A DNA stretch of 64,000 nucleotides, taken from positions 1 through 64,000 of the IMG/VR virus record IMGVR_UViG_3300042519_004024; one strand, 5' to 3'. A model generated the notes under the pieces. It saw nothing but the letters and a program-made list of their open reading frames with translations, was not told the DNA's origin and searched no databases. Every line of letters begins with the position of its first letter. Position 1 is the first letter of the stretch. Below, in pieces: positions 890 through 63,774 of this stretch. The position numbers and the translations under genes were made by a program.

Positions 890-907
890 ATAAGATAAAT
901 ATTACCC

Positions 908-1354
908 CTATAAATAAATTTCACCGTATTTGCGATACATTCCTGAATCTTTATACATTGAAATTTTTTCTGAATATAAATCAGGAAATAGATTAATAAG
1001 TCCTTTTATTAAATCAATATTATAGACGTTATATAATGCATACGCATCTTCACCAAATCTATGTTTAAGATAATCATCAAACACAACTGCACCGACAAAC
1101 CCTGATTTTCTAATAAGTGTTAAACCACGATCCATTAAAAGAATATCACCACCCCTTCTTTCTAAATGTAAATCATCATAATGACTAATAAGATATGAAA
1201 CTATATTTTCTTTATTATTTCCGATGATATCAAGCAAGTTTCCAACCCCACCAACAAGTTCGGCGGTTTCATTCCACCCATCTTGTTCAATTCTATCAAG
1301 AAGTGTGTTATCTAAAGTTTCTTCCTTTAATATTTTTTTAATTAAATTTTTCAT
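908..1354 (-). CDS. leader-bearing protein (MKxLIKKILKEE class) with 'G..T..LVGG..NL' module
   Basis: MKNLIKKILKEE; TATTTAT at 1368-1374. Confidence 0.8.
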   Translation of the reverse strand: MKNLIKKILKEETLDNTLLDRIEQDGWNETAELVGGVGNLLDIIGNNKENIVSYLISHYDDLHLERRGGDILLMDRGLTLIRKSGFVGAVVFDDYLKHRFGEDAYALYNVYNIDLIKGLINLFPDLYSEKISMYKDSGMYRKYGEIYL

Positions 1355-1384
1355 ATAGTCTACTTTAATAAATATATCAAAATA

Positions 1385-1410
1385 AAAAACCCCACTTGAT
1401 AGGGTGGGGG
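1385..1410 (-). terminator. intrinsic terminator
   Basis: CCCCAC/GTGGGG stem followed by a T-run on the minus strand, downstream of 1420..1671. Confidence 0.75.
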
Positions 1411-1419
1411 ATGTATAAT

Positions 1420-1671
1420 TTAAATTTTAGAATCAATTTGTTGAATAACGTCTTTTAGTTTACGAACAAGTCTTCGAATGTTATCCACCTCGTCACCCAT
1501 TTTTTTATAATCTCCTTTTCTTTGTAATGCACCATAGTCATCCATAGATGCTGTTAATCTTCGTGTCACACTTCTTAGTTCATCTTTAACACCTTCTAAA
1601 GACGGGGTATTCTCATTTAACACTTTTTTTACAATTCTTGTAACGTCGTTTTCTGTTATTCTAGTTCTCAT
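1420..1671 (-). CDS. leader-bearing small coiled-coil protein (LTE..RIVK class)
   Basis: MRTRITENDVTRIVKKVLNE; TATTTAT 5 nt upstream. Confidence 0.8.
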   Translation of the reverse strand: MRTRITENDVTRIVKKVLNENTPSLEGVKDELRSVTRRLTASMDDYGALQRKGDYKKMGDEVDNIRRLVRKLKDVIQQIDSKI

Positions 1672-1688
1672 AGTTTATAAATATACGT

Positions 1689-2087
1689 TTATATATAAAT
1701 TTTACCAATAGAGTTTATTTCAATCCCGTGACGATCAAACAACCAATCTTTAATTACATTTCTTGCTCCGTCCTTATCAAGTTTAAATCCAAAACGTAAA
1801 AAATCTGAAAGTTCACTATTAACCTCAACTATTTCAATATCTCGTGTAAATTGCAAAAACAATTTATTCTCATGATTACCAAAATAGTCACCATATTTTC
1901 CATTAACCCTTTTTGTCACCAATAAATCCATAAATTGTATGGGATCATTATCAAATGCCAATTGTGCCAAGGTTTCAGGATCACCAACCAAAGGGTACGT
2001 ACTTTCCCAACCATCCAAATTAACCATACGTTTTAAATCAGATTTAATATTTTCTTCTTTTAATATTTTTTTAATTATATGTTTCAT
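1689..2087 (-). CDS. leader-bearing protein, related to 908..1354
   Basis: MKHIIKKILKEE then DGWESTYPLVG, similar to DGWNETAELVGG. Confidence 0.8.
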   Translation of the reverse strand: MKHIIKKILKEENIKSDLKRMVNLDGWESTYPLVGDPETLAQLAFDNDPIQFMDLLVTKRVNGKYGDYFGNHENKLFLQFTRDIEIVEVNSELSDFLRFGFKLDKDGARNVIKDWLFDRHGIEINSIGKIYI

Positions 2088-2090
2088 TTT

Positions 2091-2564: not shown

Positions 2565-2639
2565 ATACAATAAATACCCACAAATAAAAAAGAGGGTGGC
2601 TGGAGAAGATTAAGTGTAAAAAAAATTAGAAATAATGAT

Positions 2640-3329: not shown

Positions 3330-3403
3330 ATAGATAAATATAACATAATAAAAACCCCCAATCTTATTAGGAATGGGGTAACTTATAGTTTTAATTATTT
3401 TTA

Positions 3404-4021
3404 CTAATTCATTTGTTGCAATTTTTCAACAATATAATTAAAAACTTCTTCACCACTTTTCCCATCTTGTACATGTAATTTTGATTGTACAAAAACTCCA
3501 TTGGCTAACCCCCTGTCACCCTCAAATGAATATACCTCACCAAATCCATTATCATCATCACTAATATATAATTCAAAAATTCCATTCATGGTTTCTTTAA
3601 CACTAATAAAAACACCGTTCTCATTTGTCTTTTTGTGAAATAGTTCTTCTTGTTCTTTAATAACACGTTTAAAAATTTCCATTTCATTTAATTTGTTATA
3701 TTCTGTATTTTCTAATTCTAACATAGATTCTTCATAACAATCAGAAATTTTTTCATAATCATCTGATGATATTAATTTTTTTCTCAAGTATCTACTTGCG
3801 GTATTCATGTAATCATCCAGTATTTGAATAATTTTTTCTTTGGTTATCATTCCACTTGGAAAATCGGCATGTACAAGGTATTCCATATTTCTACACAAAT
3901 CATAAGGTATCAACTCATTTTCCGAATCAAATTCTTCGTCATCAGAAAATCTCATCTCACTAATGGTTCGTTTAACAATACGAGTTAAATCAGATTCTGT
4001 AAGTCTTATTATTCTTTTCAT
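3404..4021 (-). CDS. leader-bearing two-module protein
   Basis: MKRIIRLTESDLTRIVKRTISE; internal leader-like LNE..FKRVIKEQ. Confidence 0.8.
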   Translation of the reverse strand: MKRIIRLTESDLTRIVKRTISEMRFSDDEEFDSENELIPYDLCRNMEYLVHADFPSGMITKEKIIQILDDYMNTASRYLRKKLISSDDYEKISDCYEESMLELENTEYNKLNEMEIFKRVIKEQEELFHKKTNENGVFISVKETMNGIFELYISDDDNGFGEVYSFEGDRGLANGVFVQSKLHVQDGKSGEEVFNYIVEKLQQMN

Positions 4022-4099
4022 AATTATTTTTATTTATAAATATGATGACACACCAAAAAGGAAGGGGGCGGGGGGATGGTTCGGTGTAAAAAAAATTTT

Positions 4100-4357: not shown

Positions 4358-4361
4358 ATGA

Positions 4362-4881: not shown

Positions 4882-4913
4882 CAAAGATAATATAATAGTT
4901 GGGATTTACCAAA
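4882..4913 (-). promoter_or_regulatory. Bacteroidota-type sigma promoter (TTTG-N20-TATCTTTG)
   Basis: matches the established -33 TTTG / -7 TAnnTTTG consensus. Confidence 0.75.
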
Positions 4914-4983: not shown

Positions 4984-5316
4984 TTATACAGGGTTTACAT
5001 CTAATGTCCAAACAGCAGTATACGTATAATCTTTCATTGGAAAAAACATATCCATTATAAAATCAATCTCTCCTACTAATTCTGAAAAATCACTTGTTGT
5101 TACAATATCATCTTCATCAGAAATATAAATTGTAATTTTAATTTCTGGAGTTGGGATTAAATTTGAATTAAACCAAGTACCCATTTCAAAATCAACGTCT
5201 TTAAACCAATCTACATCAGAAAAGTATTCTATAATAAAGTTCTTTAATACTTTAATTACTTTACGAAACTCTGTCTCGGTTTCTTCTTTGAGTATACGTT
5301 TAATAAGATGTTTCAT
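4984..5316 (-). CDS. leader-bearing protein
   Basis: MKHLIKRILKEE; TATTTAT 6 nt upstream. Confidence 0.8.
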   Translation of the reverse strand: MKHLIKRILKEETETEFRKVIKVLKNFIIEYFSDVDWFKDVDFEMGTWFNSNLIPTPEIKITIYISDEDDIVTTSDFSELVGEIDFIMDMFFPMKDYTYTAVWTLDVNPV

Positions 5317-5339
5317 ATAAGAATAAATATAAGGGGAAA

Positions 5340-5792: not shown

Positions 5793-5913
5793 AATATAAT
5801 GTTTTATACATAAATACCCCGATTTTTCATAAAATTTTTCCAGAATTTTTTTTAATATCATAGGGACTTTTTTCTTATGAATACTTTGCAAAGGGGACTG
5901 TCCCCCCTTTTTA

Positions 5914-6043
5914 CCCCTGACAATGTGTCATATCGGAGGGGGGATACGGGGGAGGGGGCCCCAAATATATAGGGGGGTGGGGTATGCCAAAGTATAGAGG
6001 GGGGTATATAGTCCCCGTCATTTATTAACAGTCAATGTGTCAT
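5914..6043. repeat. G-rich island bracketed by an 11-bp direct repeat (CAATGTGTCAT)
   Basis: six runs of 4 or more G between 5938 and 6004; repeat copies at 5921-5931 and 6033-6043. Confidence 0.8.
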
Positions 6044-6099
6044 GTTAATAACTCTCTAAAAATATATGGGGGAATGTTTTGTAGTCTCATATATAATCC

Positions 6100-6246
6100 G
6101 TACCTTTATGATTGTCAGTGGTTCAGTCCGAGACGGGTCAGGGAAACAAGTTCTTCTCTAAGAGGGTGGACTCCAACCTGCCTTATAGTTTACAAAAGTT
6201 GGGACGTGTTGGAGTCTACTCGGTCCCCATCGTTAGTGACAGTTAC
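6100..6246 (-). ncRNA. candidate structured non-coding RNA, family unknown
   Basis: GC-enriched, with nested stems (9-bp GACUCCAAC/GUUGGAGUC; CCGAG/CUCGG; UGUCA/UGACA), downstream of a host-type promoter; boundaries approximate. Confidence 0.4.
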
Positions 6247-6892: not shown

Positions 6893-6965
6893 ATTCCTTA
6901 ATGTTGTAACGGTTTACCATTAATTATATTAATGTTTTGTTGATAAATAAATACTAAATTGGTGT

Positions 6966-7616
6966 CTGACAGTATGTCAGGGGGAATGTTGATAACTTTT
7001 TTTTAAAAAAATATGTCATTTTATTTGTTTTTGTCAAAATGTCAGTCGAGCTTCACACAGGGGACAATCCTTTTTACCACTTTTCCCCACCATATTATTC
7101 CACTATTTACCACCATAATCCTTGCTGGTTATAGCTGTACCCTAAAAAATCCCCTCTGTAGGTATCTGTAGACGTATTTTTTTTACTATATACATTTTCC
7201 AGCTAATTAATGTATTAACTATGTAGTTAGCGCGGAGACGAAGTCCTTAAGTATTTCCAACGAATGGAACATGTAAATGTGACATATAATATACCCCAAC
7301 GTATAAAGGATCACTTAGATAAGATATTATAATAGTGGGAAAACGTGGGACAATTTAAAGGAATATGGTACATATAAAATAAACGTGTCCCTTTCTGTCC
7401 CACGTTATATGGTTCGTTTATATAATACTTTATTGTTCACCATACACTATTGTTCAGTTACACTGAACATCCCCTTTTAGTGAACACCTCATCAGTATAG
7501 TATAAGAAACATACATATACATCTTATATAGATTATCCATATAGATAATGGGGGACAGTTTATTAAACCCACTGAATGGGGGGAATTTGTTTACAATAGA
7601 TAGTTTACTGTAAACT
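6966..7616. promoter_or_regulatory. palindrome-rich non-coding control region
   Basis: CTGACAGTATGTCAG (6966-6980); 11-bp inverted repeat 7342-7352/7396-7406; nested inverted repeat 7434-7486; AGTTTACTGTAAACT (7602-7616); no ORF of 60 aa or more between 6923 and 7856. Confidence 0.5.
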
Positions 7617-7855
7617 TATTAATGTGTATTATATTTTAGTGTTGTATGATTATTATATTTTAATGCTAAATGTAAATACTTTTTACAATTGTAAGGTATT
7701 TTGTTAATAGTATATTACATTATGATTTAAGATATGTCCTAAGAATTACCACATAACCTTTATAGAAATGTAAGAGTATAGGATTAAGTTATGAAACGAA
7801 TGTCGTAGTGAATGAAATGAACGGTAGAGATGAGTGAGTAAATTAAATCTATACT

Positions 7856-9347: not shown

Positions 9348-9788
9348 TTACATCTCATTTTTGATATAATAATTAATAACCATATTAAATATATCCTTTA
9401 ACACACGACTTGTTAATATGTCATAATTTATATATGCCTCATCTGCCGATTCTTCATCATATCCATAATAATAAAATACAGCAACATCATGTGGGTATAA
9501 CATTTCTATTTGTGTTAATAGATCATCTTCATCCGTTAAAACTAATGGGTTTTCATTCATCTCTATAAAAGTTAGATACTCTTCTTCTGTAGTAAGTACG
9601 ATCTCTTTAATTAATTTAATCTTAATGTCATCTGTAAAATATTCTTTACCTAAAAGATAAATTAGTTCTTTTAACCCCCCGACTAATCTGGATGTATCTA
9701 ATATACCATTATCTTTAATTTGATTAATTAAAAATTGGTTTAGGTTTTCCTCCCTTAATACTTTTCTGATATGTTCTTGTAGGTTCAT
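9348..9788 (-). CDS. leader-bearing protein (MNLQE class) with 'LVGG' module
   Basis: MNLQEHIRKVLREE...GILDTSRLVGGLKEL. Confidence 0.8.
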   Translation of the reverse strand: MNLQEHIRKVLREENLNQFLINQIKDNGILDTSRLVGGLKELIYLLGKEYFTDDIKIKLIKEIVLTTEEEYLTFIEMNENPLVLTDEDDLLTQIEMLYPHDVAVFYYYGYDEESADEAYINYDILTSRVLKDIFNMVINYYIKNEM

Positions 9789-10451
9789 TTAAGTTAATTT
9801 TGTTATAATTTCATCAACAAGTTCTTCTGTTGTTTTTCTTTGTCCGTTTTCAGTGAAAGGATTTATATTTTGTTTACCCATATAAAATTCCCTTACACTG
9901 TTAATTGATTGTTGTATATCATCATCTTTGATTCCATCCTCTAAATTAGGTTGTCCCATCTTTTCCGCTCTGTCTTTTCTAGTTTGTTTTAGGAATTGGA
10001 TGTATGGTTTATCGTTTTCAGGTGAAAAAGGTAAACCAAAAACAAATAAGTTTGGTAGAGTATCTAATAGATCAGAATTTTTTATACTATCCCCACCAAT
10101 ATCCAAAACTACTTTGGTGTCACCATATTTTTGTAACAATTTAGTAAGAACACATCTCTTGTATTCATCATTTGTTGACCCATAATTATGTCCGTCTTCA
10201 GTTCTTGTAATATTAACTTCTACACCAGGTTCTCCCTTACATAATTCTTCATATTCTATACTACCTTCCATTTCATCAACATCTATATGAGGTATTCCCA
10301 ATTTTTCAGCAACCGCTTTAGCAGTTGTTGATTTACCAGCACCTGCCGTTCCAACAAATACAATAGGTTTGCTTTCGTAAACCCTTTGTTCTTCCTCAAT
10401 GATTAACCCCATCATTGATTTCATTCTTGATATGTGCTCTTGTAGGTTCAT
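9789..10451 (-). CDS. leader-fused P-loop kinase (shikimate/nucleotide kinase-like)
   Basis: MNLQEHISRMKSMM leader; Walker A GTAGAGKS followed by HIDVD. Confidence 0.75.
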   Translation of the reverse strand: MNLQEHISRMKSMMGLIIEEEQRVYESKPIVFVGTAGAGKSTTAKAVAEKLGIPHIDVDEMEGSIEYEELCKGEPGVEVNITRTEDGHNYGSTNDEYKRCVLTKLLQKYGDTKVVLDIGGDSIKNSDLLDTLPNLFVFGLPFSPENDKPYIQFLKQTRKDRAEKMGQPNLEDGIKDDDIQQSINSVREFYMGKQNINPFTENGQRKTTEELVDEIITKLT

Positions 10452-10454
10452 ACT

Positions 10455-11252
10455 CTATAAATCTTTAACGTACCCATCAATACCATTTTCGTTTATAAAC
10501 TCTTTAAAATAAATTTGTTTTGTACTACCTATTCCTTTAGTGACAAATTCACCTTCATCATACATCTCACCGAACTTATCATTAACCCATTTTAATACAA
10601 CATCTATAAGTCTTTTCTCATCATCTTTAAAATTATTTAAATTATACCATCTAAATAATAAACCTTCATTCTCATACGAGTCTTTTATATTTTGATCGGT
10701 AGTTGTATCAACATAATTTTTAATAAATTTACTAATTGGAAGTATGTGTCCCGCCGTAGAGAAAAATATATTTCTATCACTATTTAATAAGTTATATTCG
10801 GTGGCTAAAATACAAATATTCACACCTTGAGTTGTATAACCAACCATAGTATATTTATTTAACAAGGTTGCCTTTTCTTCATCCTCGTCATCCCCTCTCA
10901 TTCTTCTCATAGTCTTAAATAACTTAAGAAATTCAGGTGATCTTTCTATTTGTTTGGATCCTCGGACATAATATGAATTTTTAAAAAGCTCATTTAAATA
11001 GTTATATATTAATTTATTTAATAAACTTTCATAATCAATTTCTCCCGATTCTTCTTTTGCCACTTCAGGTTCATAATTAAAATCTTGTTCATTTCCTCCT
11101 GAATTTAAATGGGTGTTATATGCATCCATTTTATCTTTATCTTCTTTAGATAATTCTTCTCCTCGTCCAATCTTATCTAAGATATCGTCAATGTTTTCAT
11201 TAACTAATCCCATCATTGATTGTATTCTATTTATTTGTTCTTGTAAATTCAT
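10455..11252 (-). CDS. leader-bearing protein
   Basis: start moved to MNLQEQINRIQSMMGLVNE (ATGA overlap). Confidence 0.8.
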   Translation of the reverse strand: MNLQEQINRIQSMMGLVNENIDDILDKIGRGEELSKEDKDKMDAYNTHLNSGGNEQDFNYEPEVAKEESGEIDYESLLNKLIYNYLNELFKNSYYVRGSKQIERSPEFLKLFKTMRRMRGDDEDEEKATLLNKYTMVGYTTQGVNICILATEYNLLNSDRNIFFSTAGHILPISKFIKNYVDTTTDQNIKDSYENEGLLFRWYNLNNFKDDEKRLIDVVLKWVNDKFGEMYDEGEFVTKGIGSTKQIYFKEFINENGIDGYVKDL

Positions 11253-12022
11253 TTTGTTATATCTATATACCAAACTTTTATTGGTTCTATCCCCATCTGT
11301 AATGCTGTTGATGTTCTTTTGAATCCACCAATTAAAACATAATCATTACCTTCTTTTTGTGTGAAGTATTTTACAACAAATGCTGGTGGTAGTTTTCTTT
11401 CTTCACCCCTTCTTGCGTAATCTCTATAATCATCTATGTTTTTTGCCAATCTTCTTGGGTCTTCTTCATCTGAATCTTTTAGTCGTTGTGATACTCTTGA
11501 CGATACGCCTTTTTCTGGTGATTTATTCCATAAGAAATCTGTTATTTTTCCCATATAATCTGTGTTGTCCACATTGTCAACATATTCACCGGTTTCTGGA
11601 TCTATCCCTTTCCATACTTTCATTTCACCAAGACCAAAGAATTTATACCCTTCTTCTATACATTGTTGGTCATTCATCAATATATCTTTTAATTCATTCC
11701 ATCTTTTTTCTTCTTTTAAAAGAGATATCATATTTTGATTTAAAAGTATGTCCTTAATTTCACCTTCACTTTCTACTTCTTCACCTTTGGCAAATTCAGC
11801 AATTGTTTTAAATGTGTGTGGCATAATACGATAAACAGTATCGTAGTTGTCGGGATTAAAAAACTCTTGTTCTGTAAACCTACCAGGGTTTCCTAGTAAC
11901 TCACTTAATTCTTGTGTAAAATATTCCTTTGTTGGGTATTCCCATTCAACTTTGTATGGGTTTGATACTTCATTTAATCCCATCATTGACTGTATTCTTG
12001 ATATTTGTTCTTGTAAGTTCAT
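11249..12022 (-). CDS. leader-fused protein with C-terminal ParB/sulfiredoxin-like domain
   Basis: LPPAFVVK...YVLIGGFKRTSTALQMGIEPIKV resembles the ParB/Srx GxxR motif. Confidence 0.6.
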   Translation of the reverse strand: MNLQEQISRIQSMMGLNEVSNPYKVEWEYPTKEYFTQELSELLGNPGRFTEQEFFNPDNYDTVYRIMPHTFKTIAEFAKGEEVESEGEIKDILLNQNMISLLKEEKRWNELKDILMNDQQCIEEGYKFFGLGEMKVWKGIDPETGEYVDNVDNTDYMGKITDFLWNKSPEKGVSSRVSQRLKDSDEEDPRRLAKNIDDYRDYARRGEERKLPPAFVVKYFTQKEGNDYVLIGGFKRTSTALQMGIEPIKVWYIDITK

Positions 12023-12023
12023 A

Positions 12024-12797
12024 TTATTTAGACTCAGGTAATTTCATATCCTTTATAAATTTATCGTGAGACTTTTTATAAGATTTCTGTGACTCATCAT
12101 TTGAATCTTTAGTGTATTGCCAATTCCAATAAAGTTTGTTGTTAGGTTTGAACCCATAATACTCATGACTTTCTTTTTGTGTTTCAGTAACATTCTCACC
12201 ATTCCAATTTTGTCCAACACAAATAAATCCTGATTCAATATCTTTAATTAAATTAGACTCACCTAAGGTTGAGTGTCTATTTTGAATCCATGTAAGTCTT
12301 TCCATTAAGTTTTGGTAATACATATTTGCTTGTCCCCATCTTACAGATGAAAAGAATACCACCGCATCTGATTCAAATAATTCTTTACTAACCTTCCATA
12401 GTTCATCTGATGGTTCATTAATATTTACCCAACATCTATGATGTCCTGTGGGGTTCTTTTTCTTGTCTTTAAGAGCCGCTTTTAATAATCCACAAGAGTT
12501 TCCATCAGCTCTTGATACATTACCCTCACATGGTAATATTTTAAGTTCTGTGATATCCATATAAGTTGCCTTGTTACCCAATTCTTCTTTAATGTGTAAT
12601 GCCAACAATCTTGATTTAGGAATGTCCATATTATTCTCATCCCAATTATATCTATTGGAACAACTTAGTAATAAAACTTTCTTTTTATTTTTAAGTATTT
12701 TAATTGTTTCTTCTAATACTTTCCATCCGTCAGATTGTACCATCTCTTCGGATAACATTATTGATTTCATTCTTGATATTTGTTCTTGTAGATTCAT
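12024..12797 (-). CDS. leader-fused flavodoxin-fold NAD(P)H:FMN reductase / iron-sulfur flavoprotein-like protein
   Basis: KVLLLSCSNR, ILPCEG..C..C, DAVVFFSSVRWG, LMERL. Confidence 0.8.
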   Translation of the reverse strand: MNLQEQISRMKSIMLSEEMVQSDGWKVLEETIKILKNKKKVLLLSCSNRYNWDENNMDIPKSRLLALHIKEELGNKATYMDITELKILPCEGNVSRADGNSCGLLKAALKDKKKNPTGHHRCWVNINEPSDELWKVSKELFESDAVVFFSSVRWGQANMYYQNLMERLTWIQNRHSTLGESNLIKDIESGFICVGQNWNGENVTETQKESHEYYGFKPNNKLYWNWQYTKDSNDESQKSYKKSHDKFIKDMKLPESK

Positions 12798-13288
12798 TAT
12801 TTTTTCTTTTTAACACAATTAGGGTATTGTTTACCAAACATTGTTTTCATTCCTTTTTGAGTATATCCTTTCCAACACTTTTCTGTTAACTCACCTTCTT
12901 TCATTTCAATTTCAGAAGAATCTGTATCAAAAATTATATCACCTATTACATCTAATGTTTTTTTGTTTGTGGCGTTTTTAATTACCTTCGGGGCTTTTCC
13001 TTCATCGTATGCTTCTTTCCATCTTTTTGCACATAAACACCATCTATCTCCGCTTTTTAACATAGATAAATCATTTCCTTTTGATTTTGTAAACTCAAGG
13101 AATTCATCATCCACTTCACTACAAACCGTGTGTGTACCTCCATCTGTACTATCTGTCTTGCAATAACCATCCCTGAAATAACCTGTAATTGGATTTTTCC
13201 CGCATATTTGTAATGGTTTATCTAATATATTCATATCAGATATATCCATCATTGATTTCATTCTTGATAATTGTTCTTGTAGGTTCAT
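12797..13288 (-). CDS. leader-fused DUF2237-family protein with C-terminal Cys mini-module
   Basis: PITGYFRDGYC, HTVC, GND, GDRWCLCAKRW; tail CWKGY...PNCV; TATTTAT 4 nt upstream. Confidence 0.8.
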   Translation of the reverse strand: MNLQEQLSRMKSMMDISDMNILDKPLQICGKNPITGYFRDGYCKTDSTDGGTHTVCSEVDDEFLEFTKSKGNDLSMLKSGDRWCLCAKRWKEAYDEGKAPKVIKNATNKKTLDVIGDIIFDTDSSEIEMKEGELTEKCWKGYTQKGMKTMFGKQYPNCVKKKK

Positions 13289-13310
13289 AGTAATAAATAC
13301 TATAAAAATA

Positions 13311-15422: not shown

Positions 15423-15423
15423 A

Positions 15424-15792: not shown

Positions 15793-15837
15793 ATTATAGA
15801 TAAATATATCCCTAACACAATTATGTTGTTGTGTAGG

Positions 15838-16251: not shown

Positions 16252-16262
16252 TATACAAATAT

Positions 16263-16296
16263 AAAAAAAATCCCTCATTTATACAAATGAAGGATT
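16263..16296 (-). terminator. intrinsic terminator
   Basis: TCCCTCATTT/AAATGAAGGA stem plus T-run. Confidence 0.65.
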
Positions 16297-22070: not shown

Positions 22071-22156
22071 TATCTCATATTTATAGGTTTCCTTAAACCG
22101 TCTTTTATAAATAATAAATATTACTTTAAATGTATTTATGTTAAAAATAAAGTAAA

Positions 22157-22594: not shown

Positions 22595-22624
22595 AAAAGG
22601 GAGTTTTTTAACTCCCTTTCTTTT
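22593..22624. terminator. bidirectional terminator
   Basis: AAAGGGAG/CTCCCTTT stem between convergent genes. Confidence 0.75.
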
Positions 22625-23400: not shown

Positions 23401-23432
23401 CAAAGATATGTAAATTATTATAAACTTCCAAA
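23401..23432 (-). promoter_or_regulatory. Bacteroidota-type promoter TTTG-N20-TATCTTTG
   Basis: consensus match upstream of the DUF932 gene. Confidence 0.75.
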
Positions 23433-23455
23433 TTTTTTTTAATATATTTATCATT

Positions 23456-24830: not shown

Positions 24831-24868
24831 AATATTTTTTATTATAAATATATATTAAAAAGAAAAAA

Positions 24869-25856: not shown

Positions 25857-25910
25857 AGTGAATAAAATATAATTTATTAATTTATTAATGTCAAATAATT
25901 ATTATTTGGT

Positions 25911-30776: not shown

Positions 30777-30796
30777 AATAATAAATACCATAAAAA

Positions 30797-31135: not shown

Positions 31136-31167
31136 CAAATATATATATTCTTTTTTGATTAATCAAA
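31136..31167 (-). promoter_or_regulatory. Bacteroidota-type promoter TTTG-N20-TATATTTG
   Basis: consensus match. Confidence 0.75.
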
Positions 31168-35061: not shown

Positions 35062-35096
35062 AAGTTTTTTTAATTATAAATATATCTTAATTACTT

Positions 35097-36225: not shown

Positions 36226-36237
36226 AATCATAAATAC

Positions 36238-36594: not shown

Positions 36595-36612
36595 ATAAGA
36601 TAAATATGTTTT

Positions 36613-37879: not shown

Positions 37880-38125
37880 AGTACAAATATAATAAAACTT
37901 TTTTAAACAAACAACCCCCCAATATTTCTACTGAGGGGTTTATATGATTTGGTTCAAGTTATTAAAAAAGCTCAAATTTTAAGAGTTTTAAGGTTTAATA
38001 AAATGACTTTTGAGTGTTTGAATTTTCTGTTAAAATTAGGACATTACTTAATCACAATCAATTATCAACTATACAGTTTTCTATGTAGAACAAGCCATAC
38101 TTTTTAACACTATCTTCAAATCATA

Positions 38126-38560: not shown

Positions 38561-38596
38561 AATGTTAAGTATATAATTTATTTTTTAATATGTCAA

Positions 38597-43265: not shown

Positions 43266-43289
43266 ACCACAAATATATAAATAATTTTT

Positions 43290-44051: not shown

Positions 44052-44474
44052 TTACAAAGATAAATGTTTTTTTGCGTTTTCTAAAAATTTCTCAATATTT
44101 TCTTTTCCTGCAGGATTTGCCGAATGAACCAAATATTTTGGTAATGGTACGTTCTTGTTTACACAATACTCAACAAGGAACTTTGCACAATCAAGTCCAG
44201 TTTTTTCCATAGAACCAAATTTCATATTCATTTCATCTTCAGACATACCTTCATAATCTTCAGGTTTAAAGTCATAGTGAAAATCAGCCAAGTCGTGATC
44301 AAAAGATACAAACTCAGGAACACCATTATCTTCAATGTATTTGACAAACTCATCGTGGTTTGTTACTATATCCCAATCATTCTCCCAATAAAATTTATTG
44401 AATGATGACGGTATTAATCTTATTGCGTCTTTTGGAATTCTGAAGTCATCCAAAAATAATTTATTATTTTTCAT
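44052..44474 (-). CDS. cyclic-phosphate-processing receiver-like domain protein
   Basis: LFLDDFR.P, VSFDHDL, TGLDCAKFL, VHSANPAG. Confidence 0.8.
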   Translation of the reverse strand: MKNNKLFLDDFRIPKDAIRLIPSSFNKFYWENDWDIVTNHDEFVKYIEDNGVPEFVSFDHDLADFHYDFKPEDYEGMSEDEMNMKFGSMEKTGLDCAKFLVEYCVNKNVPLPKYLVHSANPAGKENIEKFLENAKKHLSL

Positions 44475-45095: not shown

Positions 45096-45127
45096 CAAAG
45101 GTAAGAAATGTTTTTTAATAAAACAAA
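45096..45127 (-). promoter_or_regulatory. Bacteroidota-type promoter TTTG-N20-TACCTTTG
   Basis: consensus match. Confidence 0.75.
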
Positions 45128-46792: not shown

Positions 46793-46817
46793 ACATATAA
46801 ATATATTGGGGTTTGGT

Positions 46818-47861: not shown

Positions 47862-47893
47862 CAAATATACAATTATTGTTTTAATCTATCAAA
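47862..47893 (-). promoter_or_regulatory. Bacteroidota-type promoter TTTG-N20-TATATTTG
   Basis: consensus match; back-to-back with a + strand TATTTAT at 47895-47901. Confidence 0.75.
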
Positions 47894-47910
47894 CTATTTA
47901 TAATATTATT

Positions 47911-50566: not shown

Positions 50567-50581
50567 AATACAAATATAATA

Positions 50582-50785
50582 TTATTTTCTTAATATGTTA
50601 CGTAATGTTTTTGTTTTTTCATTATAAAATTTATAAATAAAGTTTACCATATCAAAACACTCCAATTTATTTTCCCACTTTAATTTAAAGTTATCAAACA
50701 TTTTTACAGAAGTTGTTAGTTGTCCTTCTGTTTGTGACGATTTTAAAACTTTTAAGATAAAGTCGAATTGATTTGATGCTGTCAT
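50582..50785 (-). CDS. hypothetical protein
   Basis: 67 aa; TATATTTG at 50810-50817. Confidence 0.65.
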   Translation of the reverse strand: MTASNQFDFILKVLKSSQTEGQLTTSVKMFDNFKLKWENKLECFDMVNFIYKFYNEKTKTLRNILRK

Positions 50786-50822
50786 TTTATAGGTTTTTAA
50801 TTACTCCTACAAATATAATAAA

Positions 50823-58151: not shown

Positions 58152-58391
58152 TTATTCTTCAATCTTATTTATGAATGATTGTCTTTTAATTCTTACCAAA
58201 TCCTCAAGTGGCCAAATAACTGTATATTGATAATTGTTCCAATATTTATCAGGAGTGTTAGTTCTTAATTGTTTTGCAAAATTACTAATCAATTTTAAAG
58301 CAGTAAATGTCTGTTGGTGTGTCTCACAAGAATCAATTACTTTTTCAATCCAGTTTGATACGTCTCCGTAGTGTGTGCTTCTATTTTCCAT
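58152..58391 (-). CDS. hypothetical protein
   Basis: 79 aa; promoter 4 nt upstream. Confidence 0.7.
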   Translation of the reverse strand: MENRSTHYGDVSNWIEKVIDSCETHQQTFTALKLISNFAKQLRTNTPDKYWNNYQYTVIWPLEDLVRIKRQSFINKIEE

Positions 58392-58395
58392 AAGT

Positions 58396-58427
58396 CAAAG
58401 ATACAAAACTTTTTTTAAAAAAACAAA
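58396..58427 (-). promoter_or_regulatory. Bacteroidota-type promoter TTTG-N20-TATCTTTG
   Basis: consensus match, adjacent to a terminator (58420-58451). Confidence 0.75.
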
Positions 58428-60013: not shown

Positions 60014-60208
60014 TTAATTTTCTTGTTTTTCATATTGTATTATTTTATCTGTAAAAATATTATCTTCAGGATCATGTATACCTAAATTGTATGTTATAAA
60101 TGTACCATTTTCAAAGTATACTTTCAACATAAGAAACCCTAATTCTGAAATATAAATTTTATTTAACTCTCCAACACCTTTAGGTGTTTGTATCATCGGG
60201 CTTCCCAT
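60014..60208 (-). CDS. hypothetical protein
   Basis: 64 aa. Confidence 0.6.
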   Translation of the reverse strand: MGSPMIQTPKGVGELNKIYISELGFLMLKVYFENGTFITYNLGIHDPEDNIFTDKIIQYEKQEN

Positions 60209-60620
60209 AATTTGAAATTTTATCGTGGATTTTTTGTAATGTGTTAGTAATCTGAGATTTTATTTCTTTCTCGTACTCGGTTCTAATTTCATCAACCTTT
60301 TTATCATATTGTTTTGTAATTTTTTCAGCATCTCTTTTAGCTAATTTAATCACATAATGATAAACATGATTTGTAATTTCAACTTTTTGATCCTCAATGA
60401 TTATAAAAATATCTAAAGACTTATTAATAAGATATCTTTTTCCAGATAATGGTGCGATTGTAAACTTTGTGTCTGAATGATTAATCATTTTTCTAATTAT
60501 AGCGGTACAAATCTGCTCATAACCACTATTTTCATCATAGGTTTTTAAAAATGAACCTTGTTCCCATTTATAAAATTTAACCTTAAATCTTTTATATTGT
60601 CTTCTAAACCATTTTTTCAT
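60180..60620 (-). CDS. hypothetical protein
   Basis: 146 aa; TATATTTG at 60639-60646. Confidence 0.7.
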   Translation of the reverse strand: MKKWFRRQYKRFKVKFYKWEQGSFLKTYDENSGYEQICTAIIRKMINHSDTKFTIAPLSGKRYLINKSLDIFIIIEDQKVEITNHVYHYVIKLAKRDAEKITKQYDKKVDEIRTEYEKEIKSQITNTLQKIHDKISNYGKPDDTNT

Positions 60621-60669
60621 ATAACACGTTTAATAGTACAAATATAAAAAAAATAATTTAATCAGACAA

Positions 60670-61596
60670 CTAAGATGGGAGTTTTTTTCCTTTGTGATGT
60701 GTTTTTTCGTTTTCTACTTTAATCTTAATCTTTGGTTCGTGTCCCTTTGGTAGTTTGTTTTTAATTCCTACCATTTCCCCCATGTCATTATCCATTCTAA
60801 CAGTAACTTCTTTTTTGTCAAGATTCAACATTATTTGTCCTGTAGTTTGCATGTTGTACATATTCTTAGTTCTGTATGGATTTAAAAATGGATTCTTATC
60901 GTATTTTTGTTTTAATCTGTCAATTACCTCACTGTCTGTTTTTACATCCTCTAAATGTTTTTTAGCAAAGTCTAATCTCATATGAGATGATTTTTTCTTT
61001 TCACCTTTAGTATAACCAACACTTTTATGGTATATTCCGTGGTTAGTTCTTACAATTACTTTTGTTTCTTTTTTTAATTTTTTAATAATAGGCGAATGTT
61101 TAGATGTCATTTCAATAACATAAACACCATTAGAATCTGAAACAAACGTTTCCCCCTTTAACCCAACATCTTTTTTATCTTTACCACTAAACCCAACAAT
61201 AGATTTTATTACTTGTGGTAATGTTTTTTGTGATAATGCCTTTCTTATTTTTTCACCATCATAAGATTTAATTCTGGTTTCAGTTGCATCGTTATTCCTT
61301 TTCTTTTGTACTTCTTTTCCTTCTTTTTCGTCTTGATTAACAAGTAAGCTAGAATTTACTATACCTATACCATATTCATTCATTCCTTCACTCCAATCAG
61401 TATCAACATCTCTCCAATACACCACTTCAACGCCATCAATAAGTTCGTGAACAATCTCAACTTTTGCTTTATACCCCCTGTCTCTATTTTTTGCAAGAAC
61501 AACACTATCACCAAGCCTAACCGCAGCTATTGTACATTCCTTTATTAACTCAGGTTGGGTTTCTTCTATTAATATTTGTTTAATTAAATTGTTCAT
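60670..61596 (-). CDS. leader-fused Ntn-hydrolase (peptidase C45 / choloylglycine-hydrolase-like)
   Basis: LIKE|CTIAA..LAKNRDR..EGMNEYGIGIVNS..RTNHG. Confidence 0.75.
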   Translation of the reverse strand: MNNLIKQILIEETQPELIKECTIAAVRLGDSVVLAKNRDRGYKAKVEIVHELIDGVEVVYWRDVDTDWSEGMNEYGIGIVNSSLLVNQDEKEGKEVQKKRNNDATETRIKSYDGEKIRKALSQKTLPQVIKSIVGFSGKDKKDVGLKGETFVSDSNGVYVIEMTSKHSPIIKKLKKETKVIVRTNHGIYHKSVGYTKGEKKKSSHMRLDFAKKHLEDVKTDSEVIDRLKQKYDKNPFLNPYRTKNMYNMQTTGQIMLNLDKKEVTVRMDNDMGEMVGIKNKLPKGHEPKIKIKVENEKTHHKGKKLPS

Positions 61597-62252
61597 TTAA
61601 ATTTTTTCACTCTTTCTTTTGTTCTCATTTTATTTGCGTAGTCTAACCAAACTTCTTTAACTTTTTTCCATTCTTTTTTTGGATTTTTAAACTTTCTTTT
61701 GTTTTCGTCAAACCATTCATCCATGGCGTCCTCCAAAGATATTTTTTTTGTTTTAGATCTTTTTATCAGTCCTCTAACATAAGCAGGTATTTCAACATTA
61801 GATGTTAAATATTTAAAATTATAATCTTCATCTTCTTCATCATATTCTTCATCATTTTTTACATACATATCGTCAAAATTTTGTTGCTCAACATGTTCTA
61901 ATTCATGTTCAATAGTTTCTTTTACTTCAGCAACTAAATCATTCATACTTTTAGGGAACTCGTCAGGGTTGTAGGTTATTTCAATTTCTATTTCTTGCAT
62001 ATCACCAGATCCCCTAACAGAAAACGGATCTTCCATTTTTTTATCTTCTATAAAATAACAAAAGAAATCAAAATTAGCATATTCATCACCTTTTTCAAAA
62101 TGAATATTCTGTAATTCAAAATCTTTTTTATTTTTAAACTGATTAATAACAAATCTAGATAAAGCCAATGATAGTTCATCTGTTTTTCTTTCTGTAATAA
62201 TTTTTTTTGAGATTTTTTTTACAATCCCCTCTAATAGTGTTTTTTTGTACAT
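61593..62252 (-). CDS. leader-fused HExxH zincin-like protein
   Basis: KKIITE; TIEHELEHVEQ..EIPAY; TATTTAT 4 nt upstream. Confidence 0.65.
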   Translation of the reverse strand: MYKKTLLEGIVKKISKKIITERKTDELSLALSRFVINQFKNKKDFELQNIHFEKGDEYANFDFFCYFIEDKKMEDPFSVRGSGDMQEIEIEITYNPDEFPKSMNDLVAEVKETIEHELEHVEQQNFDDMYVKNDEEYDEEDEDYNFKYLTSNVEIPAYVRGLIKRSKTKKISLEDAMDEWFDENKRKFKNPKKEWKKVKEVWLDYANKMRTKERVKKFK

Positions 62253-62308
62253 ACTAATAAATATCATTTAAAAAAAAAGTATTATATTTGTATCTAAATA
62301 AAATAGAT

Positions 62309-62878
62309 ATGAGATTTTTTGTTGTACTTTTTTTCTTGATTATTAATAATTTTTTACTTTCTCAACAAATTAATAATCAAAATTTTAACTCTTCGGAGAT
62401 GAACCGTGTTTTGTTAAAAACTTTTAACGAATTTCGTAAATCTAAAGGTTTGGATACCCTTATTTATTCTGAAACAGTGTTTGATAGTCTTTCTTACCCA
62501 AACTGTGTTGAGGTTTCTTCTTCTTGTAAATTTTACCATCCGTCGCTTACTAATAGATGGAAAAACAAAACTTTAAGAGAGTTAATTGTAAACGAATCTT
62601 ATAATAAAATTGGTGGTAACGTAATGAGACATTCTTCAGGACTTCCTTGGATGGATACTTGGGAAAATGCCTTTAGATCTTATGGAATCTTTACTAGTTA
62701 TGAAGAAATTGCAAAAATAGCAATTGAAAGTTGGGAAAATTCTCTTGGACATAGTAGAGTTCAAAATATGTCTTTTGAGTCTGGTGGGTTACCGGGGTTA
62801 TTTTCTTGTCATTCGGCTTATGGTAAGAACGGTTACATTTACATATATATAAATTTTGTTACCGTACACAGAAATTAA
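62309..62878 (+). CDS. secreted CAP/SCP-domain protein
   Basis: signal peptide; NEFRKSKGL; WENSLGH; TATATTTG at 62283-62290. Confidence 0.7.
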   Translation: MRFFVVLFFLIINNFLLSQQINNQNFNSSEMNRVLLKTFNEFRKSKGLDTLIYSETVFDSLSYPNCVEVSSSCKFYHPSLTNRWKNKTLRELIVNESYNKIGGNVMRHSSGLPWMDTWENAFRSYGIFTSYEEIAKIAIESWENSLGHSRVQNMSFESGGLPGLFSCHSAYGKNGYIYIYINFVTVHRN

Positions 62879-62881
62879 TTT

Positions 62882-63490
62882 TTACTGTTGTAGATGTGTC
62901 ATAAGAACACCACCTAACGCAGTTGCATGTACTTGTAAATGGTTAATCGATTCCATATCAAGTCTTGTTTTTCTTTTTGTATAATCTAAACCTAAAGTTC
63001 CAATAAACTTATCATCAATTGTTTTAATTGCAAATAAGTAACCAGACTTACAGTTAGTATCTTCTGCAATATATTTTAAACCATATGTAGCAATTGATTC
63101 ATCCTTGTAATCAGGAATTTCAATAACGTCGTTACTTAGTAATTGATTTATAGATTTTGAAAATAGGTTTACTGGTATGTTATGAAAATTTGTTTGGACT
63201 GATGTGACTCCAGGATGTACCGTTTCATACATTATAGAAAACTTAGCCATTGATTTTCCTGTTGGGTAAAAGTTACCCCCATTGTGGAATTGTGTTATCC
63301 AAACCCTATCAGCATTAAACTCTTCTTTTATGTGTTCTATTTTGTTTGTTACAAGCTCTGAAACCCTTAAAGTTTCTTTAACCATATCAGGTTTTTCCTT
63401 CTTCTCAAGCTTACTCTTTATATAAAGAACTAAGATTGGTCCGATAACTCCCGTTATAAATGCAATAATAATCCCCACGTATTCACTCAT
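62882..63490 (-). CDS. single-TM protein with GAF-like domain; T4 gp t-like holin candidate
   Basis: N-terminal TM; ADRVWITQFHNG, YET, IEIPD, FIGTLGLDY. Confidence 0.55.
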   Translation of the reverse strand: MSEYVGIIIAFITGVIGPILVLYIKSKLEKKEKPDMVKETLRVSELVTNKIEHIKEEFNADRVWITQFHNGGNFYPTGKSMAKFSIMYETVHPGVTSVQTNFHNIPVNLFSKSINQLLSNDVIEIPDYKDESIATYGLKYIAEDTNCKSGYLFAIKTIDDKFIGTLGLDYTKRKTRLDMESINHLQVHATALGGVLMTHLQQ

Positions 63491-63499
63491 AATATTTTT

Positions 63500-63748
63500 T
63501 TAATTTGATCCAGAATAATTTCTTTTATTTTCCATTTTTTCATAATAACCTTCTTTAGAACCTTTCCAATCCCAAGGCAAATTATTTTTCATATTGTATT
63601 CCAACTTATCTTTAGAAATTCCTTTTAATTTCATCATAAGTTTTTTATAAAAAGATTCATCATTATTATCCTCCTTATCTTTTTCTAATATAACTTTTTT
63701 GACAATTCTTGTCAAATCAGTTTCGGTTAATCTTGTAAATCTTTTCAT
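63500..63748 (-). CDS. leader-bearing small protein
   Basis: MKRFTRLTETDLTRIVKKVILE; TATTTAT 8 nt upstream. Confidence 0.8.
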   Translation of the reverse strand: MKRFTRLTETDLTRIVKKVILEKDKEDNNDESFYKKLMMKLKGISKDKLEYNMKNNLPWDWKGSKEGYYEKMENKRNYSGSN

Positions 63749-63774
63749 ACTAATTAATAAATATACCGTTAATC

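What the first reader, a model, noticed from the sequence alone, without database searches (positions are those of the whole stretch)
895..63763. Two promoter-like motifs split the genes: TATTTAT before leader-bearing units, TAnnTTTG before leaderless genes
Seen: sense-strand TATTTAT lies 4-17 nt upstream of the first gene of most leader-bearing units (895, 1368, 1677, 2570, 4036, 5323, 5810, 13293, 15800, 24844, 30781, 36230, 46797, 47895, 62257, 63757) and a few acidic ORFans. TAnnTTTG, six times with TTTG exactly 20 nt upstream (4882, 23401, 31136, 45096, 47862, 58396), precedes only genes without a leader. Established: TTTG/TAnnTTTG is the Bacteroidota housekeeping promoter. Inference: host-polymerase early genes versus a phage-specific late promoter; late expression is what virion cargo would need.
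Basis: partly seen in the sequence, partly recalled or inferred. Interest (0 to 1): 0.7.

Follow-up and report, generated by a model that had tools for sequence, protein, structure and literature searches.

The report
Late promoter box of Bacteroidota T4-like phages
A lake-water giant phage of Bacteroidota marks its virion genes, and a large family of genes with a shared N-terminal tag, with a TATTTAT box that is most likely its late promoter, a variant of phage T4's TATAAATA read by a phage sigma factor, while other genes carry the host's own TTTG/TAnnTTTG promoter.

Summary
All 16 TATTTAT and all 6 TTTG-N20-TAnnTTTG sites are at the stated coordinates. TATTTAT is not over-represented in the window overall (59 against 62 expected); what is non-random is where it sits.

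- **Placement.** It is the most enriched 7-mer upstream of gene starts genome-wide (60 genes against 4.5 expected). It marks operon heads (45/113 gapped genes against 1/139 tightly packed). It has no -35 partner.
- **Conservation.** It is kept in 16 of 18 orthologue pairs with a relative at about 50% protein identity, although the flanks have diverged.
- **Late genes.** It also precedes baseplate, tail tube and sheath genes here, the prohead protease in a relative, and terminase, portal, sheath, tube and hub in the cultured Flavobacterium phage immuto.
- **Sigma factors.** The genome encodes two. A divergent one is distantly related to T4 gp55 and is shared with immuto. The other resembles Bacteroidota sigma-A, and immuto lacks it.
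- **Leader genes.** 15 of 16 head-of-unit leader genes carry TATTTAT and none carries TAnnTTTG.

The clean two-way split is too simple. Two thirds of TATTTAT sites precede genes without a leader, a third promoter class (TTGACA-N17-TATAAT) exists, and one leader-like gene has TAnnTTTG. Late timing and the transcription start are inferred, not measured. I rate this a new variant of a known kind.

The parts
895..901 (-). TATTTAT box, 5 nt before ATG of 464-889 (MKIIITKK, leader family 2)
1368..1374 (-). TATTTAT box, 13 nt before 908-1354 (MKNLIKKILKEE, leader family 1); follows a hairpin plus T-run terminator
1677..1683 (-). TATTTAT box, 5 nt before 1420-1671 (MRTRITENDVTRIV, leader family 3)
2570..2576 (-). 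TATTTAT box, 5 nt before 2091-2564 (MKKIIRLTESEL, leader family 3)
3334..3340 (-).
4036..4042 (-). TATTTAT box, 14 nt before 3404-4021 (MKRIIRLTESDL)
5323..5329 (-). TATTTAT box, 6 nt before 4984-5316 (MKHLIKRILKEE); terminator upstream
5810..5816 (-). TATTTAT box, 17 nt before ATG at 5792 (MKRTIKLTESDLTRIVKR); my automatic start at 5861 was too long
13293..13299 (-). TATTTAT box, 4 nt before 12797-13288; single box heading six tightly packed MNLQE-leader genes (9348-13288); box and spacing kept in L024 while the flanks differ
15800..15806 (-). TATTTAT box, 7 nt before 15424-15792; heads a four-gene leader array (14076-15792)
22107..22120 (-). Two overlapping-phase TATTTAT boxes, 36 and 43 nt before 21681-22070 (MKKLIKNILKEE), head of a leader array
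22133..22139 (+). TATTTAT box, 17 nt before 22157-22279 (40-aa basic ORF), divergent from the previous unit
23445..23451 (+). TATTTAT box, 4 nt before 23456-23950 (acidic ORFan)
24844..24850 (-). TATTTAT box, 13 nt before 24006-24830 (MNRRNLLITESEK)
30781..30787 (-). TATTTAT box, 4 nt before ATG at 30776 (MEFKKRDLL); heads the unit that holds six MKIIITE-leader genes (25911-29247), after a terminator
35076..35082 (-). TATTTAT box, 14 nt before 34597-35061
36230..36236 (-). TATTTAT box, 4 nt before ATG at 36225 (MERIFLFES)
36600..36606 (-). TATTTAT box, 5 nt before 36238-36594
46797..46803 (-). TATTTAT box, 4 nt before 45539-46792 (MAKIIITEKQ)
47895..47901 (+). TATTTAT box, 9 nt before ATG at 47911 (MEHLIRKILLQE); the unit continues with 48285-49865 (MKIILTEEQ)
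62257..62263 (-). TATTTAT box, 4 nt before 61593-62252; the unit continues with 60670-61596 (MNNLIKQILIEE)
63757..63763 (-). TATTTAT box, 8 nt before 63500-63748 (MKRFTRLTETDL); terminator upstream
4882..4913 (-). TTTG-N20-TATCTTTG (host sigma-A type), 25 nt before a 57-aa ORF starting at 4856
16256..16287 (-). TTTG-N20-TATATTTG, exactly 4 nt before 15838-16251; box and spacing kept in L030
20662..20669 (-). TATGTTTG 4 nt before 19287-20657 (leader-like MKNLLKEEIFRIQ); lies inside the upstream gene and has no -33 TTTG; the one exception to the split
23401..23432 (-). TTTG-N20-TATCTTTG, 24-27 nt before 22624-23373; kept in L030 and G001
31136..31167 (-). TTTG-N20-TATATTTG, 38 nt before 30846-31097
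37884..37891 (-). TATATTTG, 4 nt before 37301-37879; head of a long run of small genes
43270..43283 (-). TATATTTG 4 nt before 43134-43265, overlapped by a TATTTAT (43277-43283)
44055..44062 (-). TATCTTTG, 4 nt before 43838-44050
45096..45127 (-). TTTG-N20-TACCTTTG, 4 nt before a GTG at 45091
47862..47893 (-). TTTG-N20-TATATTTG, 4 nt before 47468-47857 (P-loop protein)
50571..50578 (-). TATATTTG, 4 nt before ATG at 50566 (MKKRITFISDTH, metallophosphatase-like)
50810..50817 (-). TATATTTG, 24 nt before 50582-50785
58396..58427 (-). TTTG-N20-TATCTTTG, 4 nt before 58152-58391
60639..60646 (-). TATATTTG, 18 nt before 60180-60620
62283..62290 (+). TATATTTG, 18 nt before ATG at 62309
25866..25894 (-). 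Third class: TTGACA-N17-TATATT, 9 nt before 25599-25856
38568..38596 (-). Third class: TTGACA-N17-TATACT, 7 nt before 38126-38560

Best explanation
TATTTAT, usually preceded by a purine, is the -10-type box of this phage lineage's late promoters. It works like T4's TATAAATA box. It stands alone without a -35 element, has A/T-rich DNA downstream, and sits at the head of transcription units, often just after a terminator. It is most likely read by host core RNA polymerase carrying a phage-encoded sigma factor. The best candidate is the divergent 249-aa sigma at 212955-213704, which is distantly related to T4 gp55.

Genes with TTTG-N20-TAnnTTTG are read by the host sigma-A holoenzyme with no phage help, so they are probably early genes.

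Because the same box heads both the tail, baseplate and head genes and every unit of genes with the N-terminal peptide leader, the leader proteins are predicted to be made together with the virion parts. That is what T4-style capsid-targeted internal proteins would need.

In about a third to a half of sites the box ends 4-5 nt before the ATG. Transcripts would then start at the A of the start codon, giving leaderless mRNA.

Shown: motif placement, conservation, the gene classes involved, and the presence of the sigma genes. Inferred: promoter activity, timing, which sigma reads the box, the transcription start, and packaging of the leader proteins.
For: Placement:
- Top-enriched 7-mer upstream of starts, against composition-matched permutations and within-intergenic shuffles.
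- Operon heads only. 45/113 genes with a gap of at least 25 nt against 1/139 tightly packed genes, p = 2e-17. Internal leader genes score 0/29 although they share the same N-terminus.
- Distance to the ATG varies from 4 to 43 nt, so it is not a ribosome-binding element.
- No -35 or -33 element upstream in 127 sites.

Conservation:
- The same enrichment and spacing appear in 17 related loci.
- It is again the top 7-mer in relative G001.
- Across 64 orthologue pairs at a median 50% identity, the box is present in both members of 16 pairs, in one member of 7, and in neither of 41. p = 5e-9, with the flanks diverged.

Late genes:
- Here: gp25-like and gp6-like baseplate wedge, baseplate hub, tail tube and sheath, and virion structural proteins.
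- Relative G002: gp21-like prohead protease and other genes of the head module around the gp23-like capsid gene.
- Cultured Flavobacterium phage immuto: terminase, portal, sheath, tube, hub and tape measure, where TATTTAT is among the three most enriched 7-mers together with two that overlap it.

Sigma factor:
- The 249-aa protein has a weak Sigma70_r2 hit and viral sigma-family look-alikes.
- Its family profile finds only gene 55 in the whole T4 genome (E 0.0018) and finds an orthologue in immuto (E 7e-36).
- The same profile reaches PDB gp55 at E 0.097.
- The AlphaFold model (pLDDT 90) has sigma factors as nearly all of its top Foldseek hits.
- Immuto lacks the other phage sigma.

Leaderless geometry:
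- The host -7 box lies at -12 to -5 (PMC9723704).
- Base -1 is a pyrimidine in 90% of sites with 4-5 nt spacing, against 49% elsewhere, p = 1e-11.

T4 late promoters are an 8-bp TATA box with no -35 conservation and about 50 sites per genome (PMC2988020).
Against: - No transcript start or time-course data. The metatranscriptome contigs were too sparse to help.
- The box also precedes superoxide dismutase, DnaB and a glycosyltransferase operon, so it may be a middle-plus-late class or a general phage class rather than strictly late.
- Similarity of the 249-aa sigma to gp55 is marginal. It is longer than gp55, and its C-terminal helices may form a region-4-like domain.
- Neither a T4-type clamp (gp45) nor gp55 itself was found by direct search.
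- In this genome the 249-aa sigma gene lies at the end of an operon that is itself headed by a TATTTAT, so something else would have to start its expression.
- The contig is only about 71% complete.
Confidence: 0.7

Rival explanations
1. TATTTAT is a promoter, but it is read by the other phage sigma, the 271-aa Bacteroidota sigma-A-like protein at 108525-109340, acting as a variant of the host -7 box.
For: - The 271-aa protein is a complete sigma with regions 1.2, 2 and 4.
- Its nearest cellular relatives are Bacteroidota sigma-A, at 38-45% identity.
- It keeps the Bacteroidota-type residues in region 2.4.
- TATTTAT(W) would occupy the same place as TAnnTTTG and shares TA and two T positions with it.
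Against: - The complete immuto genome has TATTTAT before its late genes but no homologue of this sigma.
- The factor has a conserved region 4.2, yet TATTTAT sites have no -35 or -33 partner.
- A separate class with a -35 element (TTGACA-N17-TATAAT) exists that suits it better.
Confidence: 0.13
2. TATTTAT is a weak variant of the host sigma-A -7 box, used by unmodified host polymerase with no phage-specific factor. Any timing difference would come from promoter strength or DNA replication.
For: - It has the same geometry relative to the ATG as TAnnTTTG, with the 4-nt spacing class in both.
- Host flavobacteria tolerate variant -7 boxes, SM1-3 and SM5 (PMC9723704).
Against: - The position matching the invariant G of TAnnTTTG is G in 1 of 59 sites.
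- There is no TTTG at -33, whereas 25 of 57 TAnnTTTG sites have TTG there.
- The two classes serve different gene sets.
- The phage carries two sigma genes.
Confidence: 0.1
3. TATTTAT is not a promoter. It is an RNA-processing or translation-initiation signal, or sequence carried along with duplicated leader cassettes.
For: - It lies very close to start codons.
- Many leader genes are paralogues that could have been copied together with their upstream DNA.
Against: - It is absent before 138 of 139 internal operon genes, including 29 leader genes with the same N-terminus.
- Spacing ranges from 4 to 43 nt.
- It is often placed directly after terminators.
- It precedes unrelated structural genes in four phages.
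Confidence: 0.05

Closest known systems
Phage T4 late promoters (TATAAATA) read by gp55 with gp33 and the gp45 sliding clamp
   Same: - A single TA-rich box of 7-8 bp at the -10 position, with no -35 conservation and A/T-rich DNA downstream.
- Tens of sites per genome, placed before head, tail and baseplate genes of a T4-like myovirus (PMC2988020).
- A phage-encoded sigma whose family profile picks out T4 gene 55.
   Different: - The box is TATTTAT(A/T), not TATAAATA. The two central bases differ.
- The sigma has 249 aa, against 185 for gp55, and the similarity is only marginal.
- No gp45-type clamp or gp33 was detected.
- Many sites sit 4-5 nt from the ATG, which predicts leaderless mRNAs.
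- The host is Bacteroidota.
Bacteroidota sigma-A promoter (-33 TTTG, -7 TAnnTTTG)
   Same: The second motif class fits fully. It reads TAtnTTTG, with TTG starting 22-23 nt upstream of the box, is enriched before genes, and is conserved in relatives (PMC9723704).
   Different: - In the phage, 7 of 20 intergenic sites, and more after start correction, sit exactly 4 nt from the ATG. That predicts leaderless mRNAs, against 5.5% in F. psychrophilum.
- TATTTAT itself fails this definition. It has no terminal G and no -33 element.
T4 internal proteins with a capsid targeting sequence (CTS)
   Same: - Otherwise unrelated proteins share a short conserved N-terminus containing an I/L-x-E motif (seen directly in the sequences).
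- A gp21-type prohead protease is present in the lineage.
- The loci are hypervariable.
- The genes share the promoter of the virion genes.
   Different: - There are about 48 genes in three leader families, not a handful.
- Packaging and cleavage are untested.

Membership tests
Bacteroidota sigma-A promoter | -7 box TAnnTTTG with invariant terminal G | tested here: met
   For the TAnnTTTG class: 25 sense copies in intergenic DNA against 7.3 expected; logo TAtnTTTGt. For TATTTAT the feature is not met: G at the matching position in 1 of 59 sites.
Bacteroidota sigma-A promoter | -33 TTTG about 19-21 nt upstream of the -7 box | tested here: met
   TTTG-N17-23-TAnnTTTG: 13 sense and 2 antisense against 0.25 expected. 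Seven N20 sites in the window against 0.87 expected. Absent upstream of TATTTAT.
Bacteroidota sigma-A promoter | Box at -12 to -5 relative to a mapped transcription start | not testable with these tools
   No usable 5'-end data. The positions are taken from PMC9723704.
T4-type late promoter and gp55 system | 8-bp box TATAAATA | tested here: not met
   The invariant core is TATTTAT followed by A or T. TATAAATA is seen only by accident where TATTTAT is followed by AAATA.
T4-type late promoter and gp55 system | No -35 conservation; A/T-rich DNA downstream of the box | tested here: met
   Information content over 127 sites: nothing upstream except a purine at -1; downstream is A-rich.
T4-type late promoter and gp55 system | Located before head, tail and baseplate genes | tested here: met
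   this genome; G002; immuto; G001.
T4-type late promoter and gp55 system | gp55 homologue | tested here: inconclusive
   The single T4 gp55 sequence finds nothing. The profile of the 249-aa sigma family hits only gene 55 in T4 (E 0.0018) and PDB 7d7c_F (E 0.097). The fold is sigma-like.
T4-type late promoter and gp55 system | gp45 sliding clamp and gp33 co-activator | tested here: inconclusive
   gp45 protein and Pfam PF09116 give no hit in this genome, G001, G002 or immuto, while T4 itself is found. The contig is incomplete and the model may be too narrow. gp33 was not searched.
T4 capsid-targeting-sequence internal proteins | Short conserved N-terminus on otherwise unrelated proteins, with a prohead-protease site (I/L-x-E) | tested here: met
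   N-terminal clustering gives 25, 14 and 10 members. The motifs ITE, LTE, LKE and LQE are visible in the sequences. Bodies mostly have no Pfam domain; the one clear match over the family threshold is a cell-wall hydrolase.
T4 capsid-targeting-sequence internal proteins | gp21-type prohead protease in the phage | tested here: met
   Found in relative G002 (phrog_207, E 7e-45). This contig ends before the head module.
T4 capsid-targeting-sequence internal proteins | Protein present, and cleaved, in virions | not testable with these tools
   Needs virion mass spectrometry.
phiKZ/AR9-type phage multisubunit RNA polymerase promoters | Phage-encoded beta/beta'-like polymerase subunits | tested here: not met
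   PF00562 gives no hit in the genome. The giant proteins have no Pfam domains. PF00940 also gives none, but that search matched nothing in the control genomes either, so it shows nothing. Two sigma genes point to use of host core polymerase.

The most novel reading that the evidence does not exclude
This abundant freshwater lineage of T4-like jumbo phages of Bacteroidota runs a three-step sigma cascade.
- Host sigma-A reads TTTG/TAnnTTTG.
- An early-expressed phage copy of sigma-A with a shortened region 3 reads TTGACA-N17-TATAAT.
- A gp55-related sigma reads TATTTAT.

The late box is placed so that many late messages are leaderless. It drives a hypervariable arsenal of about 50 capsid-targeted proteins that are injected into the host.
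Probability: 0.3. Interest if true: 0.75.

Novelty: new variant of a known kind. Interest (0 to 1): 0.55.

Why it matters
- **Annotation.** It gives a simple, testable way to pick out late genes in Bacteroidota T4-like phages, which are numerous in lakes and poorly annotated. That includes the cultured phage immuto, whose gp55-like sigma is still labelled 'hypothetical'.
- **Leader proteins.** It ties a large family of N-terminally tagged proteins of unknown function to virion-gene expression. That makes the idea that they are packaged and injected directly testable by virion mass spectrometry.
- **Leaderless mRNA.** It predicts unusually frequent leaderless messages in a phylum that does not use Shine-Dalgarno sequences.
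- **Sigma specificity.** It offers natural sigma-promoter pairs for studying how sigma specificity shifted from TATAAATA to TATTTAT.

Tried and rejected
- **Nucleotide search.** One window gene pair searched against the phage collection gave no match.
- **Direct T4 searches.** T4 gp55 and gp45 proteins searched against the genome gave nothing. Pfam gp45-slide_C found nothing in this genome, G001, G002 or immuto. This says nothing about absence.
- **PDB.** The single 249-aa sigma sequence against PDB gave nothing. Only the family profile reached sigma factors and gp55.
- **RNA evidence.** Seven metatranscriptome runs hold parts of the tube and sheath genes. They hold them only as 150-390-nt contigs at depth 2-5, so they give no ends and no timing. 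I did not use the second read-laying run.
- **Close relatives.** Aligning orthologous upstream regions in close relatives mostly failed, because the leader-gene region has little synteny. The more distant genome G001 gave the usable footprint instead.
- **Unit-level test.** A first test of leader genes by unit-head promoter was weak (p = 0.07). My start calls were wrong for several genes, and chance TAnnTTTG copies inside coding sequence were counted. I replaced it with the head-of-unit test.
- **Polymerase families.** PF00562 and PF00940, and Pfam on the 2320-, 2129- and 1272-aa proteins, gave no hits.
- **Rfam.** Nothing in the window.
- **Literature.** I found no paper on TATTTAT as a phage promoter or on late promoters of Flavobacterium phages in the library searched.
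- **Chance.** I rejected chance in A/T-rich DNA as an explanation, even though the raw count equals expectation.

Full report
**Context.** The window is the first 64 kb of a 213,924-bp virus record from lake water. It has 30% G+C and is rated 71% complete. Most genes lie on the - strand. The phage is a T4-like myovirus.
- Tail sheath, tail tube, gp25-like and gp6-like baseplate wedge, baseplate hub, family-B DNA polymerase, DnaB and a UvsX-like recombinase were found.
- The head genes lie beyond the contig end. In the 120-kb relative G002 they are a gp23-like capsid protein, a gp21-like prohead protease and a large terminase.
- The host phylum is Bacteroidota. Genes carry the canonical Bacteroidota promoter, no Shine-Dalgarno sequences are visible, the nearest cultured relative infects Flavobacterium, and one phage sigma factor is closest to Bacteroidota sigma-A.

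**The observation.** 'Leader' means a shared N-terminal peptide.
- Clustering the first 32 residues of all proteins gives three families: MKxLIKKILKEE/MNLQEHI..., MKIIITESQ... and MKKIIRLTESDLxRIV....
- Together they cover about 48 genes, 35 of them in the window.

**Is it more than chance?** The raw number of TATTTAT copies in the window is what shuffling predicts (59 against 61.7). Their placement is not.
- TATTTAT is the most enriched 7-mer in the 40 nt before the 280 called genes (60 genes against 4.5 expected).
- 29% of all copies lie within 30 nt upstream of a same-strand start, against 2-14% for the 20 permutations of the same letters.
- Within intergenic DNA alone there are 63 sense and 29 antisense copies, against a shuffle mean of 12.6.
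- TTTG-N17-23-TAnnTTTG occurs 13 times in sense and twice in antisense, against 0.25 expected.

**A transcription signal, not a translation signal.**
- TATTTAT stands before 45 of 113 genes that have an upstream gap of at least 25 nt, but before only 1 of 139 genes packed tightly behind another (p = 2e-17).
- None of the 29 internal leader genes has it, although they share the same N-terminal coding sequence. The six-gene MNLQE array at 9348-13288 has a single box at its head.
- The distance to the ATG ranges from 4 to 43 nt, with peaks at 4-5 and 11-16 nt.
- Several boxes follow a hairpin and T-run directly.
- Over 127 non-redundant sites, nothing upstream is conserved except a purine at -1, and the downstream stretch is A-rich.
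- TAnnTTTG sites, by contrast, have TTG starting 22-23 nt upstream of the box.

**Conservation.**
- In 17 related loci the same enrichment and spacing hold, and the downstream genes are overwhelmingly leader-bearing.
- In G001, a relative at a median 50% protein identity, TATTTAT is again the top 7-mer.
- Among 64 orthologue pairs, the box is present in both members of 16 pairs, in one member of 7, and in neither of 41 (p = 5e-9). The flanking upstream DNA is no longer alignable.

**Which genes carry TATTTAT.**
- In this genome: baseplate wedge and hub, tail tube and sheath (with 31-39-nt leaders), several large virion proteins, and also superoxide dismutase, DnaB and a glycosyltransferase operon.
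- In G002: the prohead protease and other genes of the head module around the capsid gene, whose own upstream region has no box within 70 nt.
- In the cultured Flavobacterium phage immuto: terminase, portal, sheath, tube, hub, tape measure and a virion structural protein. There TATTTAT is among the three most enriched 7-mers, together with two that overlap it.
The box does sit before head-module and tail genes elsewhere, though not directly before either major capsid gene examined.

**Sigma factors.** No polymerase gene was detected in the 214 kb. Two sigma genes were found.
- **The 271-aa sigma, 108525-109340.**
  - It has regions 1.2, 2 and 4.
  - It is 38-45% identical to Bacteroidota sigma-A.
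  - It keeps that group's region 2.4 and 4.2 residues but has a shortened region 3.
- **The 249-aa sigma, 212955-213704.**
  - It has only a weak region-2 match, and its look-alikes are viral sigma families.
  - A profile of 77 diverse relatives finds exactly one place in the T4 genome, inside gene 55 (E 0.0018), and an orthologue in immuto (E 7e-36).
  - The same profile reaches PDB gp55 at E 0.097.
  - Its model (pLDDT 90) has sigma factors as nearly all of its top Foldseek hits.
  - The immuto orthologue is annotated 'hypothetical protein'.
- Immuto has the TATTTAT late boxes and the 249-aa sigma family but no homologue of the 271-aa sigma. That co-occurrence, and the lack of a -35 element, make the 249-aa protein the better candidate reader of TATTTAT.

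**Comparison with T4.** T4 late promoters are an 8-bp TATA box one helical turn upstream of the start. They show no -35 conservation, have A/T-rich DNA downstream, number about 50 per genome, and are read by gp55 (PMC2988020). The present box has the same architecture and the same kind of target genes, but a different sequence: TATTTAT(A/T) instead of TATAAATA. I could not detect a T4-type clamp.

**Leaderless geometry.**
- In Flavobacterium psychrophilum the sigma-A box lies at -12 to -5, and only 5.5% of messages are leaderless (PMC9723704).
- Here 7 of 20 intergenic TAnnTTTG boxes end exactly 4 nt before the ATG, and 20 of 57 TATTTAT boxes end 4-5 nt before it.
- In the related loci, 53 of 98 TATTTAT boxes have that spacing.
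- At those sites base -1 is a pyrimidine in 90% (TATTTAT) and 76% (TAnnTTTG) of cases, against 49% elsewhere.
- That is the usual pyrimidine(-1)/purine(+1) start preference (my own knowledge), so these messages probably begin at the A of the AUG. This is a prediction, not an observation.

**The leader link.**
- Among head-of-unit genes, 15 of 16 leader genes have TATTTAT within 30 nt. The sixteenth has it 36-43 nt upstream. None has TAnnTTTG.
- Of 97 genes without a leader, 30 have TATTTAT and 20 have TAnnTTTG.
- The leaders resemble T4's capsid targeting sequence, a short conserved N-terminus on otherwise diverse internal proteins (PMC3012670). Each holds an I/L-x-E motif of the kind cut by gp21-type proteases (my own knowledge), and that protease is present in the lineage.
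- One leader protein is a cell-wall hydrolase.
- Packaging remains untested.

**What does not fit the simple split.**
- A third class, TTGACA-N16-18-TAnnnT, is enriched in sense intergenic DNA (6 against 0.25 expected). It precedes the DNA polymerase, other non-structural genes and a tRNA. It may be a middle class read by the 271-aa sigma, whose gene has a TAnnTTTG promoter in G001.
- The leader-like gene 19287-20657 has TATGTTTG 4 nt upstream.
- Many units show no recognisable box.

**Verdict.** I rate it a new sequence variant of the T4-type late promoter system in Bacteroidota phages. The papers I searched do not describe it.

Noticed in passing
window 25866-25894 and 38568-38596 (- strand); genome 189.6 kb, 158.2 kb, 118.5 kb, 90.6 kb, 70.5 kb: A third promoter-like class with the canonical sigma-70 look, TTGACA-N16-18-TAnnnT. 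It is enriched in sense intergenic DNA (6 against 0.25 expected). It stands before the DNA polymerase, other non-structural genes and a tRNA. It may be a middle class.
   Followed up: partly
genome 108525-109340 (L003:4525-5340, - strand): A phage copy of Bacteroidota-type sigma-A: 271 aa, 38-45% identity to Bacteroidota sigma-A, with a shortened region 3. Very many near-identical copies occur in lake metagenomes. Its orthologue in G001 has a TAnnTTTG promoter of its own. It is absent from Flavobacterium phage immuto.
   Followed up: partly
genome 212955-213704 (L008:8955-9704, + strand); immuto NC_055915.1 78174-78872: A divergent 249-aa sigma. Its family profile hits only gene 55 in T4. The immuto orthologue is annotated 'hypothetical protein'. 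In three phages the next gene downstream starts with a TATTTAT box.
   Followed up: yes
window 9348-33835 and related loci L015-L031: The leader-gene region is hypervariable. Close relatives (87-91% identity in the 635-aa query protein) share few orthologues there, much like the internal-protein loci of T-even phages.
   Followed up: partly
window 28393-29247 (- strand): A leader-bearing protein (MKIIITESQ...) with a peptidoglycan-binding domain and a Hydrolase_2 cell-wall hydrolase domain. This would fit an injected or virion-borne wall-degrading enzyme.
   Followed up: no
window 5862-6235 and 6893-7855: Two gene-free stretches of 374 and 963 nt with runs of C and G unlike the rest of the window. 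No Rfam family and no tRNA were found.
   Followed up: partly
genome 184475-185194 (+ strand): An iron/manganese superoxide dismutase gene with a TATTTAT box 4 nt upstream, kept at 18 nt in G001. It is an auxiliary gene on the virion-gene promoter.
   Followed up: no
genome about 70-80 kb: tRNA-like 3' ends and large gaps between called genes suggest a tRNA cluster. Several TAnnTTTG promoters and one TTGACA-type promoter lie there. No tRNA scan was run outside the window.
   Followed up: no
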